A stretch of 64,000 bases of DNA from positions 8,680,001 through 8,744,000 of the forward strand of contig NW_027361681.1 in NCBI RefSeq assembly GCF_039654945.1, in the 5' to 3' direction. Source of the DNA: Dendrobates tinctorius (Eukaryota). Both the position numbers and the translations under genes were made by a program. How positions within the stretch are numbered: position 1 is the first letter of the stretch; every line of letters begins with the position of its first letter. The notes beneath the pieces were generated by a model. That model saw only the letters and a list, made by a program, of their open reading frames with translations. It searched no databases and was not told where the DNA came from. Shown here one piece after another: positions 4,801 through 9,332 of this stretch.

Positions 4801-7800
4801 TCTTTCCCTACATTCATGTAATCTCTCACAGCAACAAAAGATAAAGATTTAAAAAAAAAAAAAAAAAAACCTGACCAGCACTTCCTAATAAAATACAGCA
4901 AGCGTGAATACAAGCTGCAGTGACTGCATAATATACAAACAGAAGAATGCAGCAGCCTCTGTGAGCCAAGATGAATGCAGACATTGGACATTTGAAATGT
5001 AAAACTGGATTTCTTCCACATAGAATATAACATCATTGTTTTTTAGGTTGAGGGTAGACATGTCCTTCAGGAGTCAATGACTTCACAGCTCAGCTCTTCA
5101 CACTGCAGTGGTGACAGCAGGAATGCAGCGGTGAGAACACATCAGGAAGGCCAACACTGTACTACTAATGCCAGTCTAGCGCCCTGTTCTTACCGCTGGA
5201 AGCAGTTAGACTGCCGCCCTGCTGTCACCACCAATAGTGGGCGAGAAATAACTGACCAGCACCTCCGAACAGGATGAAGCAAGTAATAATATCAGGGTCC
5301 CATCACAGAGTGGTCGCCTTGTTGTGGCTGGTGGGCTCAGATGAACTGGAGAATTAATGTGCAAAGTAACTGCATTTACATGCTATATGGCAGAAATGGA
5401 GGACATATTCCAGATATTCGATGTTTGCTGACACCTTGGCGCACACAGAGGCTGTGGTGACTATAGTGCTGCCCCAGGGGTGGAAACTAGGAAGAACTGA
5501 CATTGCTGACAGCGCCCGTGATATTGAAGCTTGTAGAGACATGGCAAACATAGCTATCAAGATAAAAGCAAACATGGCCACAGCCTGCATGTCCTAGTTT
5601 CTCCCCAGCGGCACCAGTCAGCGCTGTCATTGTGGGAGCCATCAGCTACAGTACACCCCCACCCCATAATGTCTGTGCCAGTGCTGCGGTCACTATCCTA
5701 CCTGGGTACAGGTCACTCATACTGTCCCCGGAGTCGCTTTGTTCGGACTGGTCGTCTTTAGGGGCCCACACGTCACCTTCATCATGTGCTCGTTCATCCT
5801 CTAGGGGGCGCTGCTTCTTTTTTCTTTTTAAACAAGCAGGAACAAACTCCACCCCGCGTTTCTGACAATCCTCATCTGGTGGAGAAGAGAAGGGTCACAC
5901 ACTGCAACACAAACCAAAGTACGATACCGCCAACCCATGGTGCGCCCACATGGTGCTGCCAATCATTACTAACTCGTGTCTGTGTAACACCAAGCTTTCT
6001 CCACTAATGTCCCAATCCATCGAGGGAGCTCTAAATCACCCCTATAAACCTCTCACCCTGACCTGAGGGGGTAACCAGTGAGCAGCCTTGTCCGGGTGAG
6101 GGGGTGCAATTACACCTGTGCCGGGCCGGGTGAGGGGGTGCAGCTACTTACACCTGTGCAGGGCCCAGGGAGGGGGTGCAGCTACTTACACCTGTGCAGG
6201 GCCTGGATGAGGGGGTGCAGCTACTTACACCTGTGCAGGGCCTGGATGAGGGGGTGCAGCTACTTACACCTGTGCAGGGCCTGGATGAGGGGGTGCAGCT
6301 ACTTACACCTGTGCAGGGCCTGGATGAGGGGGTGCAGCTACTTACACCTGTGCAGGGCCTGGATGAGGGGGTGCAGCTACTTACACCTGTGCAGGGCCTG
6401 GATGAGGGGGTGCAGCTACTTACACCTGTGCAGGGACGGGGGAGGGGGTGTAGCTACTTACATCTGTGCGGCTGGGTGACGGGGTGCAACTACATACACC
6501 TGTGCAGGGCCGGGGGAGGGGGCGCAGCTACTTACACCTGTACAGTGCCGGGTGAGGGGGTGCAGCTACTTACACCTGTACAGTGCCGGGTGAGGGGGTG
6601 CAGCTACTTACACCTGTACAGTGCCGGGTGAGGGGGTGCAGCTACTTACACCTGTACAGTGCCGGGTGAGGGGGTGCAGCTACTTACACCTGTACAGTGC
6701 CGGGTGAGGGGGTGCAGCTACTTACACCTGTACGGGGCCGGGTGAGGGGGTGCAGCTACTTATACCTGTGCCGGGCCGGGTGAGGGGGGGGGTGTGCAGA
6801 TACTTACACCTGTGCAGGGCCCAGGGAGGGGGTGCAGCTACTTACACCTGTGCAGGGCCTGGATGAGGGGGTGCAGCTACTTACACCTGTGCAGGGGGGG
6901 TGCAGCTACTTACACCTGTGCAGGGCCTGGATGAGGGGGTGCAGCTACTTACACCTGTGCAGGGCCCGGGGAGGGGGTGCAGCTACTTACACCTGTGCAA
7001 GGCCCGGATGAGGGGGTGCAGCTACTTACACCTGTGCAGGGCCCGGATGAGGGGGTGCAGCTACTTACACCTGTGCAGGGCCCGGATGAGGGGGTGCAGC
7101 TACTTACACCTGTGCAGGGCCCGGATGAGGGGGTGCAGCTATTTACACCTGTGCAGGGCCCAGATGAGGGGGTGCAGCTACTTACACCTGTGCAGGGCCC
7201 AGATGAGGGGGTGCAGCTACTTACACCTGTGCAGGGCCCGGATGAGGGGGTGCAGCTACTTACACCTGTGCAGGGCCCGGATGAGGGGGTGCAGCTACTT
7301 ACACCTGTGCAGGGCCCGGATGAGGGGGTGCAGCTACTTACACCTGTGCAGGGCCCGGATGAGGGGGTGCAGCTACTTACACCTGTGCAGGGCCCGGATG
7401 AGGGGGTGCAGCTACTTACACCTGTGCAGGGCCCGGATGAGGGGGTGCAGCTACTTACACCTGTGCAGGGCCCGGATGAGGGGGTGCAGCTACTTACACC
7501 TGTGCAGGGCCCGGATGAGGGGGTGCAGCTACTTACACCTGTGCAGGGCCCGGATGAGGGGGTGCAGCTACTTACACCTGTGCAGGGCCCGGATGAGGGG
7601 GTGCAGCTACTTACACCTGTGCAGGGCCCGGATGAGGGGGTGCAGCTACTTACACCTGTGCAGGGCCCGGATGAGGGGGTGCAGCTACTTACACCTGTGC
7701 AGGGCCCGGATGAGGGGGTGCAGCTACTTACACCTGTGCAGGGCCCGGATGAGGGGGTGCAGCTACTTACACCTGTGCAGGGCCCGGATGAGGGGGTGCA

Positions 7801-9332
7801 GCTACTTACACCTGTGCAGGGCCCGGATGAGGGGGTGCAGCTACTTACACCTGTGCAGGGCCCGGATGAGGGGGTGCAGCTACTTACACCTGTGCAGGGC
7901 CCGGATGAGGGGGTGCAGCTACTTACACCTGTGCAGGGCCCGGATGAGGGGGTGCAGCTACTTACACCTGTGCAGGGCCCGGATGAGGGGGTGCAGCTAC
8001 TTACACCTGTGCAGGGCCCGGATGAGGGGGTGCAGCTACTTACACCTGTGCAGGGCCCGGATGAGGGGGTGCAGCTACTTACACCTGTGCAGGGCCCGGA
8101 TGAGGGGGTGCAGCTACTTACACCTGTGCAGGGCCCGGATGAGGGGGTGCAGCTACTTACACCTGTGCAGGGCCCGGATGAGGGGGTGCAGCTACTTACA
8201 CCTGTGCAGGGCCCGGATGAGGGGGTGCAGCTACTTACACCTGTGCAGGGCCCGGATGAGGGGGTGCAGCTACTTACACCTGTGCAGGGCCCGGATGAGG
8301 GGGTGCAGCTACTTACACCTGTGCAGGGCCCGGATGAGGGGGTGCAGCTACTTACACCTGTGCAGGGCCCGGATGAGGGGGTGCAGCTACTTACACCTGT
8401 GCAGGGCCGGGTGAGGGGGTGCAGATACTTACACCTGTGCAGGGCCTGGACGAGGGGGTGCAGATACTTACACCTGTGCAGGGCCCGGACGAGGGGGTGC
8501 AGCTACTTACACCTGTGCAGGGCCCGGACGAGGGGGTGCAGATACTTACACCTGTGCAGGGCCCGGACGAGGGGGTGCAGCTACTTACACCTGTGCGGCT
8601 GGGTGATGGGGTGCAGCTACTTACACCTGTGCGGCTGGGTGAGGGGGTGCAGCTACTTACACCTGTGCAGGGCCGGGTGAGGGGGTGCAGCTACTTACAC
8701 CTGTGCAGGGCCGGGTGAGGGGGTGCAGCTACTTACACCTGTGCAGGGCCCGGATGAGGGGGTGCAGATACTTACACCTGTGCAGGGCCGGGTGAGGGGG
8801 TGCAGCTACTTACACCTGTGCGGCTGGGTGAGGGGGTGCAGAATACTTACACCTGTGCAGGGCCCGGACGAAGCGCTTCCCCTGTACATGTCGCTCTACG
8901 TGCTCCGGGACCTTGTTGATGTGACGAAGGGTTAATTTACAGAACAGCTGATGTCTGCGGGAAGAGGCACGGTTAGCAGGGAGTCACCGGAGCCGGCCGC
9001 CCCTCCGCCCGCTACTGACCCGTTCTTGGTGCTGGGCACAATATGAGGCTCAAAGCTGCTGTAGTCAAACATGCGGGGCCGGCTCAGCAGCCGCCGGTAC
9101 TTCTTCCCCTCAGTAAAGCTCCGCAGCTCGGGGAGACGGCACGGCAGCTCGTGGCCCGTCACCGAGAACCGCACCTACAAGCGTGAGGGACAGGAGTCAC
9201 AGCAAGGAACAGGGGGGAAATCGCCGGCCGCGGGGCCCTATGGGTGGGTACTGGCACCTTGTTCCCGGGGATGAGCTCCAGGGCCGGGTGTCTCTCTAGG
9301 AACTCCCGCACATCCTCCGGCAGATCCTCCAT
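1885..9332 (-). CDS. SURF2: Surfeit locus protein 2, 6 coding exons, 232 aa
   Basis: Exons (minus): 9332-9258, 9174-9020, 8954-8851, 5875-5702, 4043-3925, 1956-1885; all GT-AG, phases join, 699 nt. Translation [18 protein letters not shown]...[12 protein letters not shown]...[25 protein letters not shown]...VEFVPACL...DSMSDLYP...[11 protein letters not shown] matches remembered vertebrate SURF2 motifs. Head-to-head with SURF1 as in the known Surfeit cluster. Confidence 0.95.
2018..2680. repeat. 45-bp minisatellite, about 14-15 copies, SURF2 intron 5
   Basis: Unit gggcacagcgcttacggcgaggactactcgtggactgagggggca; 15-aa periodic ORFs in several frames. Confidence 0.95.
2765..3081. mobile_element. 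Short insertion with 12-bp TSD and internal inversion; Penelope-like retroelement remnant
   Basis: Direct repeat ttactagtaatg at 2753-2764 and 3082-3093; about 54-bp inverted arms 2847-2900 / 3029-3083; degenerate CGAA(T)CGCGTC motif on minus. Confidence 0.55.
4064..4736. repeat. 45-bp minisatellite, about 14 copies plus a degenerate end copy, SURF2 intron 4, next to the exon-5 acceptor
   Basis: Unit gagctgcggggaaaggaaagggaggccgtccggaggaggtcggca. Confidence 0.95.
6085..8870. repeat. 39-bp minisatellite, about 70 copies, filling SURF2 intron 3 and overlapping the exon-3 end
   Basis: Unit gcagctacttacacctgtgcagggcccggatgagggggt; near-identical core about 6975-8405, variant units at both edges. 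Confidence 0.95.

What the first reader, a model, noticed from the sequence alone, without database searches (positions are those of the whole stretch)
6085..8870. SURF2 intron 3 is a tandem array of about 70 copies of its own 5' splice site
Seen: the sense-strand exon-3 junction is TCGTCCGGGCCCTGCACAGGT|GTAAGTA. The 39-bp unit reads ...TCATCCGGGCCCTGCACAGGT|GTAAGTAGCTGC, i.e. the last 18 exonic bases plus the donor. Nearly every copy has the same -3..+6 nonamer (GGT|GTAAGT) as the true site, and the coding exon end is itself the first unit. Using the second donor (8813) adds 37 nt (frameshift); every later donor includes an in-frame TAA (8812-8810). Each unit also has CAG|GT, resembling a recursive splice point. 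Inference: either the cell picks one donor from about 70 equal competitors, or copy number tunes unproductive (NMD) splicing or U1 loading on SURF2. Array homogenisation could also convert coding bases. It may equally be a neutral expansion tolerated through exon definition.
Basis: partly seen in the sequence, partly recalled or inferred. Interest (0 to 1): 0.8.

Follow-up and report, generated by a model that had tools for sequence, protein, structure and literature searches.

The report
Splice-donor minisatellite in frog SURF2 intron
Intron 3 of a frog's SURF2 gene is mostly a 72-copy tandem repeat of its own exon/intron junction, yet assembled transcripts use only the first, authentic splice donor, as in the known human cases (F7, IFI6, CBS, LMNB2, PDGFA).

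Summary
SURF2 (Pfam PF05477) lies on the minus strand. Its exon 3 ends at 8851 (…CACAGGT|GTAAGTAT). From there to 6092 runs a 39-bp array of 72.1 copies, 94% alike. The unit is the last 18-21 exonic bases plus the first 18-21 intronic bases. 66 intronic copies keep the true site's nonamer GGT|GTAAGT.

Assembled transcripts from four runs (four studies, two organism labels) all join 8851 directly to the exon 4 start at 5875. So the first donor makes the dominant mRNA. Contigs drop rare forms, so low-level use of later donors is not excluded; every later donor would give a premature stop.

This architecture is already described. In human F7 IVS7 a 37-bp VNTR spans the exon 7/intron 7 boundary and only the most upstream donor is used. 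IFI6 (6-16), CBS, LMNB2 and PDGFA are of the same kind (PMC1557585).

Unit variants look like CpG decay, and 23% of the window is minisatellite. I read the array as a tolerated VNTR: a new, unusually large member of a known kind.

First-stage notes on other pieces of this same genome list at least six more junction-derived arrays. I did not check them.

The parts
6092..8868 (-). 39-bp minisatellite, 72.1 copies; its first unit overlaps the last 18 bases of exon 3
   Evidence: TRF; unit table; 20-mer confined to this range
8851..8954 (-). SURF2 exon 3 (104 nt)
   Evidence: Joint 9020|8954 and loose end at 8851 in the contigs of 4 runs; Pfam PF05477 positions 75-106
8843..8853 (-). Authentic 5' splice site GGT|GTAAGTAT; cleavage between 8851 and 8850
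   Evidence: Contigs leave at 8851 into the exon 4 sequence; U1 duplex -8.3 kcal/mol, 8 of 11 matches to the consensus
8810..8812 (-). In-frame TAA met by read-through and by every donor from the third on
   Evidence: translation
7225..8394 (-). Block of 30 identical 'A' units (recent homogenisation or expansion)
   Evidence: Unit string
5876..6091 (-). Unique 3' end of intron 3 with the acceptor (…ctccaccag|)
   Evidence: a 307-312 nt contig in X17 and X18 joins array units to this sequence (loose end whose letters match about 6110-6075)
5702..5875 (-). SURF2 exon 4
   Evidence: Pfam positions 108-167; its first 30 nt are the loose-end consensus of all four spliced contigs
9020..9174 (-). SURF2 exon 2
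   Evidence: Joints; Pfam
9258..9332 (-). Coding part of SURF2 exon 1 (ATG 9332-9330)
   Evidence: joint 9258|9174

Best explanation
A 39-bp segment spanning the exon 3/intron 3 boundary of SURF2 (18-21 exonic plus 18-21 intronic bases) was duplicated in tandem. By slippage or unequal exchange it expanded into a minisatellite of about 72 units that now fills 93% of the intron. It behaves as a tolerated VNTR. The spliceosome uses the most upstream donor, the authentic one at 8851|8850, and removes the whole array with the intron. The roughly 66 identical pseudo-donors stay silent or nearly so. The reason is positional: the site is first in 5'->3' order, it closes a 104-nt exon, and it is committed co-transcriptionally. 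It is not stronger than the copies. Any leak to a later donor would give a premature stop and should be cleared by NMD. Shown here: the anatomy, the origin from the junction, and use of the first donor in the dominant mRNA. Inferred: the selection mechanism (from the F7 minigene work) and neutrality.
For: Anatomy. Transcripts: in X17, X1 and X18 (organism A, three studies) and X5 (organism B) one spliced contig each runs exon 1/2/3, leaves the stretch exactly at 8851, and continues with the first 30 or more bases of exon 4. In X1 and X5 the contig is unbroken for at least 255 nt. Exon word depth is 35-168, so the gene is well expressed despite the array. The cyclic 68-69-nt unit contigs have depth 158 (X17), 52 (X18) and 8.8 (X1). 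Spread over about 31 identical copies that is roughly 10%, 5% and 0.5% of exon depth, a level I take to be ordinary for pre-mRNA. Donor strength: U1 duplex energy is -8.3 for the true site and -8.0 for the units, so position rather than strength must decide. Neutral signature: conservation is not specific to the donor. The following GCTGCACCCCC is as invariant as GTAAGT, and the variable columns sit in the exon-derived TCGTCCGGG, with TCG>TCA, CCGG>CCAG and CCGG>CTGG, i.e. CpG decay. Context: 15 arrays with TRF score of at least 200 cover 14.7 kb, or 23%, of the window, and three of SURF2's five introns hold one. Precedent: in F7 IVS7 only the most upstream of 5-9 identical donors is used, and pseudo-sites raised to consensus value 91 still do not compete. 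LMNB2 and PDGFA likewise use only the authentic site.
Against: Contigs drop rare variants and NMD removes the predicted products, so minor use of donors 2, 3 and beyond is not excluded. In IFI6 and CBS the first two pseudo-sites are used in addition to the authentic donor. Donor 2 lies only 37 nt downstream, well within exon-definition range, and is almost as strong. The library type of the runs is not on record ('RNA?' is a guess), although the spliced contigs show they contain RNA. The copy number rests on the assembly alone. Neutrality is inferred, not measured. A minisatellite also sits in SURF2 intron 3 of another frog family, which could mean persistence.
Confidence: 0.72

Rival explanations
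1. Regulated unproductive splicing. A meaningful fraction of transcripts uses donor 2, 3 or later ones, giving stop-containing mRNAs that NMD degrades. Array length or U1 availability would then set SURF2 output.
For: Pseudo-donors are as strong as the true one. Every one of them is unproductive, by TGA or TAA within about 40 nt, and two exon junctions lie downstream of that stop. IFI6 and CBS do use the first two pseudo-sites. X17 and X18 contigs break 30 nt into exon 4, showing a second upstream context there.
Against: That break is where unspliced pre-mRNA would branch. An alternative unit donor would branch 18-21 nt inside exon 3, and no run shows a break there; the exon 3 contigs are continuous. 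In the F7 minigenes equal or stronger pseudo-sites were not used even at low efficiency. Unit variation looks like neutral CpG decay.
Confidence: 0.12
2. The array works through U1 snRNP loading: about 66 strong U1 sites in one intron act as a splicing enhancer for the upstream donor, protect against premature polyadenylation, or hold the transcript on chromatin.
For: 7-8 contiguous pairs with the U1 5' end in nearly every unit. The donor hexamer differs in only 3 of 71 aligned units.
Against: The neighbouring non-donor bases are just as invariant, so donor-specific constraint is not visible. The unit read has no AATAAA or ATTAAA to be suppressed. Per-copy array depth is ordinary for an intron. 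Many other arrays in the window lack donor motifs.
Confidence: 0.06
3. The array is real but its length in this assembly is wrong: collapsed or over-extended, for example in the run of 30 identical units.
For: No read-level check of length was possible, because read laying refuses the repeat and only contigs are served. The best DNA holders have 0.70 of the sampled words and come from one sample, which may be the assembly's own source.
Against: Several unit variants and the junction from array to 3' flank are seen at 95-100% identity in contigs of three other studies. The ordered mosaic of 25 variants is typical of a resolved long-read assembly.
Confidence: 0.08

Closest known systems
Human F7 intron 7 VNTR (Borensztajn et al. 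2006, PLoS Genet, PMC1557585)
   Same: A minisatellite of similar unit size (37 bp against 39 bp) whose first monomer spans the exon/intron boundary, so the authentic donor is followed by identical pseudo-donors. Only the most upstream site is used. Use of a later site would mostly be unproductive.
   Different: F7 has 5-9 copies of a weak site (TGG|gtgggt, consensus value 74) and only 4 exonic bases per unit. Here there are about 72 copies of a site with a perfect intronic half (GTAAGTA) and 18-21 exonic bases per unit. In the frog the silence of the pseudo-sites is shown only for the dominant mRNA.
Human IFI6 (6-16) intron 2 minisatellite and CBS intron 13 VNTR (described in PMC1557585, its refs 9-11)
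   Same: The donor is reiterated by a junction-spanning minisatellite: 25 pseudo-sites in IFI6, 15-20 repeats in CBS.
Human LMNB2 and PDGFA junction repeats (described in PMC1557585, its refs 12, 13)
   Same: [quoted passage not shown] Only the authentic donor is used.
   Different: The units are longer (100 and 81 bp) and the copies fewer (10-18).
Recursive splice sites (AG|GTAAGT ratchet points of long introns)
   Same: Each unit contains …CACAG|GTGTAAGT, an AG followed by GT.
   Different: The AG and the strong donor are 2 nt out of register, the tract before the AG is C-rich rather than U-rich, and the intron is only 2,975 nt.

Membership tests
Junction-spanning minisatellite that reiterates a splice donor (F7 / IFI6 / CBS / LMNB2 / PDGFA class) | Tandem array of 10-100-bp units inside an intron | tested here: met
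   39 bp x 72.1 copies, 94% matches
Junction-spanning minisatellite that reiterates a splice donor (F7 / IFI6 / CBS / LMNB2 / PDGFA class) | First monomer spans the exon/intron boundary | tested here: met
   The array reaches 8868 and exon 3 ends at 8851. 18-21 exonic bases are shared with the units. The exon end is fixed by frame, Pfam profile and contigs.
Junction-spanning minisatellite that reiterates a splice donor (F7 / IFI6 / CBS / LMNB2 / PDGFA class) | Donor sequence repeated unchanged in the copies | tested here: met
   66 intronic copies of GGT|GTAAGT; U1 duplex -8.0 against -8.3 kcal/mol
Junction-spanning minisatellite that reiterates a splice donor (F7 / IFI6 / CBS / LMNB2 / PDGFA class) | The most upstream donor makes the normal mRNA | tested here: met
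   Spliced contigs of 4 runs from 4 studies join 8851 to the exon 4 start
Junction-spanning minisatellite that reiterates a splice donor (F7 / IFI6 / CBS / LMNB2 / PDGFA class) | Pseudo-sites silent, or only the first two used, at read level | not testable with these tools
   Only contigs were served, and they drop rare forms
Junction-spanning minisatellite that reiterates a splice donor (F7 / IFI6 / CBS / LMNB2 / PDGFA class) | Copy number polymorphic between individuals (VNTR) | not tested
   No spanning reads were available; read laying refuses the array
Recursive splice site | A 3' splice site abutting a 5' splice site so that a strong donor is regenerated at the ligated junction | tested here: not met
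   After CACAG| the junction would read GGT|GTGTAA (-6.8 kcal/mol). The strong GTAAGT lies 2 nt further on and would leave a 2-nt insert.
Recursive splice site | Sits in a very long intron (tens of kb or more; from my own knowledge) | tested here: not met
   Intron 3 runs 8850-5876, i.e. 2,975 nt
Regulated unproductive splicing (poison donor coupled to NMD) | A stop-containing isoform is detectable and stabilised when NMD is blocked | not testable with these tools
   The stops are predicted; no isoform data are available

The most novel reading that the evidence does not exclude
Junction-derived minisatellites may be produced or retained at splice junctions in this frog lineage more often than random seeding predicts. 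First-stage notes list many on other pieces of this genome, and SURF2 intron 3 holds an array in a second frog family. In that case the arrays, including this one, would modulate gene output through low-level use of pseudo-donors with NMD, or through U1 loading, with copy number as the tuning variable.
Probability: 0.1. Interest if true: 0.6.

Novelty: new member of a known kind. Interest (0 to 1): 0.3.

Why it matters
The finding is an extreme natural instance of a textbook puzzle: how one 5' splice site is chosen among identical competitors. It offers about 66 strong pseudo-donors, against 4-25 in the human cases, in a well-expressed housekeeping gene. The assembled mRNAs indicate that the 'most upstream site wins' rule described for F7 in mammalian cells also holds in an amphibian at this scale. 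If the same genome really carries many such arrays, it would be a ready-made panel for testing positional donor selection, NMD leak and VNTR effects on splicing. By itself it does not reveal a new mechanism.

Tried and rejected
- **Read laying, whole gene part:** As the tool advised, I laid only 8480-9400, that is exons 1-3 plus the first ten units. The exon 3-exon 4 joint is therefore read from loose ends, and the exon 4/5 junction was not examined.
- **Promoter/terminator scan:** the bacterial-type scan is irrelevant to a vertebrate gene.
- **Orthologous introns, exon 4 peptide:** a word search gave one hit, a partial Engystomops pustulosus SURF2.
- **Orthologous introns, exon 2 ORF:** a word search gave 35 fragments at 71% identity or less. 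Only Ascaphus truei is a named frog, and its contig covers exons 1-2 only.
- **Mammal-like fragments:** many of the other hits look mammalian and one (P0032) looks primate- or human-like. I fetched no contig for any of them and did not use them.
- **Engystomops unit versus this window's junction:** only the 9-mer CAGGTGTAA is shared. The local score is reached by 5.5% of shuffles and 12% of window tiles. The flanks show no similarity (p 0.25-0.85). Common descent or a junction origin of that array is not established.
- **Selection on the donor within units:** rejected, because the adjacent non-donor bases are equally invariant.
- **Array unit as a dispersed repeat:** rejected, because all 68 matches lie inside the array.
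- **IFI6 paper:** Turri 1995 is not held in the library, so I cite it through PMC1557585.
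Full report
**Observation**

On the minus strand the window carries SURF2.
- The exon 2, 3 and 4 translations hit Pfam PF05477 at E = 1e-19, 2e-15 and 5e-11. Exon 3 ends at profile position 106 and exon 4 starts at 108.
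- Reading the sequence together with the contig joints gives six exons:
  - exon 1: ATG at 9332, ends at 9258
  - exon 2: 9174-9020
  - exon 3: 8954-8851
  - exon 4: 5875-5702
  - exon 5: 4043-3925
  - exon 6: 1956 to the stop at 1887-1885
- Exon 3 ends …CTGCACAGGT and intron 3 starts GTAAGTAT.
- Tandem Repeats Finder reports one array at 6092-8868, period 39, 72.1 copies, 94% matches.
- The sense strand holds 68 GTRAGT. 67 of them sit in the nonamer GGT|GTAAGT, and one of those is the authentic site.
- A 20-mer of the unit occurs 68 times, only inside the array and only on this strand.
- The major unit shares 18 bases with the exon tail. Units E and L share 21.
Donor 2 (+1 G at 8813) adds 37 nt and makes TGA at the new junction. 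Every later donor includes the TAA at 8812-8810.

**What the transcripts show**

- Runs X17, X1 and X18 (organism A, three studies) and X5 (organism B, about 2% different in the exons) each have one spliced contig with the joints 9258|9174 and 9020|8954.
- Each contig leaves the stretch exactly at 8851. The loose-end consensus, reverse-complemented, is the first 30 bases of exon 4 (5875 downward).
- So the dominant mRNA uses the authentic donor GGT|GTAAGT. It uses neither the overlapping CAG|GTGTAA two bases upstream nor a unit donor.
- In X1 and X5 the contig continues unbroken for at least 255 nt.
- In X17 and X18 it breaks 30 nt into exon 4. That is where unspliced pre-mRNA branches in a 31-mer graph. 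A unit donor would instead branch 18-21 nt inside exon 3, and no run shows a break there.
- Contigs of 68-69 nt, the cyclic form expected for a perfect 39-bp repeat at k = 31, have depths of 158, 52 and 8.8. Exon depths are 54, 35 and 53. Divided by about 31 identical copies, that is roughly 10%, 5% and 0.5% of exon level, which I take to be an ordinary intronic signal.
- A 307-312 nt contig joins array units to the unique 3' part of the intron.
- Organism B has a 68-nt unit contig at 91% identity, so a close relative also has tandem units.
- Contigs cannot exclude rare isoforms, least of all ones removed by NMD.

**Anatomy of the array**

- Cutting at the donors gives 72 anchors and 25 variants in an ordered mosaic: H D I D D J K E L E M N, then 30 identical A units (8394-7225), then mixed blocks of B and C types.
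- The variable columns are in the exon-derived TCGTCCGGG. The changes are TCG>TCA, CCGG>CCAG and CCGG>CTGG, the pattern of CpG decay.
- The donor hexamer differs in only 3 of 71 aligned units. The following GCTGCACCCCC is just as constant, so no donor-specific constraint is visible.
- U1 duplex energies are -8.3 kcal/mol for the true site and -8.0 for the units. Exons 1, 2 and 4 give -5.3, -8.9 and -10.7. The first donor is therefore not chosen for its strength.

**Context**

- The window has 15 arrays with TRF score of at least 200, covering 14.7 kb or 23%.
- Three SURF2 introns hold one each, together 55% of the gene's span.
- Only the intron 3 array clearly overlaps an exon.
- With this density, an array seeded on an exon/intron junction needs no special mechanism. 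My rough estimate is that about 0.6% of genic positions lie within 20 bp of a donor, so among thousands of arrays dozens should span one if tolerated. This is inference.
- First-stage notes on other pieces of this genome list similar arrays in LDLRAD2, EIF1AD, ODAD3, MRPL37, DNAAF9, ROGDI and one unnamed gene. These are unchecked leads.

**Comparison with what is known**

- Borensztajn et al. 2006 (PMC1557585) describe this architecture. In human F7 a 37-bp VNTR spans the exon 7/IVS7 boundary and gives 4-8 identical pseudo-donors.
- Pseudo-sites raised to consensus value 91 still did not compete. Only perfect sites did.
- The same paper lists IFI6 (25 pseudo-sites, the first two used), CBS (15-20 repeats, two used), LMNB2 and PDGFA (only the authentic site used).
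- The frog array meets the structural criteria and the 'first donor makes the mRNA' criterion. It is a new member of this class, with the highest copy number among those listed.
- The recursive-splice reading fails on register and on intron length.

**Related species**

- A partial Engystomops pustulosus SURF2 contig (exons 4-5) begins inside a 59-bp x 5.9 array, 1.35 kb upstream of exon 4.
- Its unit contains CAGGT|GTAATA, which shares the 9-mer CAGGTGTAA with this window's junction.
- Nothing beyond that 9-mer is significant, and its exon 3 is not on the contig. I can say only that SURF2 intron 3 holds a minisatellite in a second frog family.
- That contig shows no other array, including in intron 4.

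**Verdict**

The array is a real, accurately described feature. The most likely reading (0.72) is a tolerated junction-derived VNTR whose pseudo-donors are bypassed by positional selection of the first site, with NMD as a backstop. The regulatory readings remain possible but unsupported. Interest is modest because the kind is known. The scale, and the possible abundance in this genome, are what is notable.

Noticed in passing
window 4064-4736 (minus strand, SURF2 intron 4): A 45-bp x 15 array whose units end in a strong pyrimidine tract plus CAG (…ccctttcctttccccgcag|ctctg). It stops 20 nt before the exon 5 acceptor (…ccctacag|ctc at 4044|4043). Use of any of these sites would extend exon 5 by 25 + 45n nt, which is always a frameshift. 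Already noted by the first stage (s1-382997). The exon 4/5 junction was not checked with reads.
   Followed up: partly
window 2015-2673 (minus strand, SURF2 intron 5): A 45-bp x 14.6 array whose unit has both an acceptor-like ccccctcag| and a donor-like CGCC|GTAAGC. It is not derived from either flanking exon boundary and ends 58 nt before exon 6.
   Followed up: partly
window 1-64000: The minisatellite load is very high: 15 arrays with TRF score of at least 200 cover 14.7 kb (23%). They include a 63-bp x 65 array at 12383-16494 and a 383-385-bp repeat at 36989-39123.
   Followed up: no
window 51898-52352 (+ strand): A 34-bp x 13.4 array in which each unit carries CAAG|GTAGGA or CAGG|GTAGGA, donor-like on the plus strand. 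No exon was identified next to it.
   Followed up: no
L001 1-350 (Engystomops pustulosus WNYA01027021.1, reversed): SURF2 intron 3 of this leptodactylid frog also holds a minisatellite (59 bp, at least 5.9 copies; the contig starts inside it). Its unit contains CAGGT|GTAATA. In the junction frame it reads …VRIALASR, against …VRALHR at the window's exon 3 end. This is suggestive of a junction origin but not significant.
   Followed up: partly
window 6092-8868 (+ strand): Because 39 is a multiple of 3, the unit reads open (stop-free) in one frame on each strand. It is not an uninterrupted ORF across the whole array, because 38-, 36- and 29-nt units shift the frame. These are by-products of the periodicity, not evidence of coding.
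   Followed up: no
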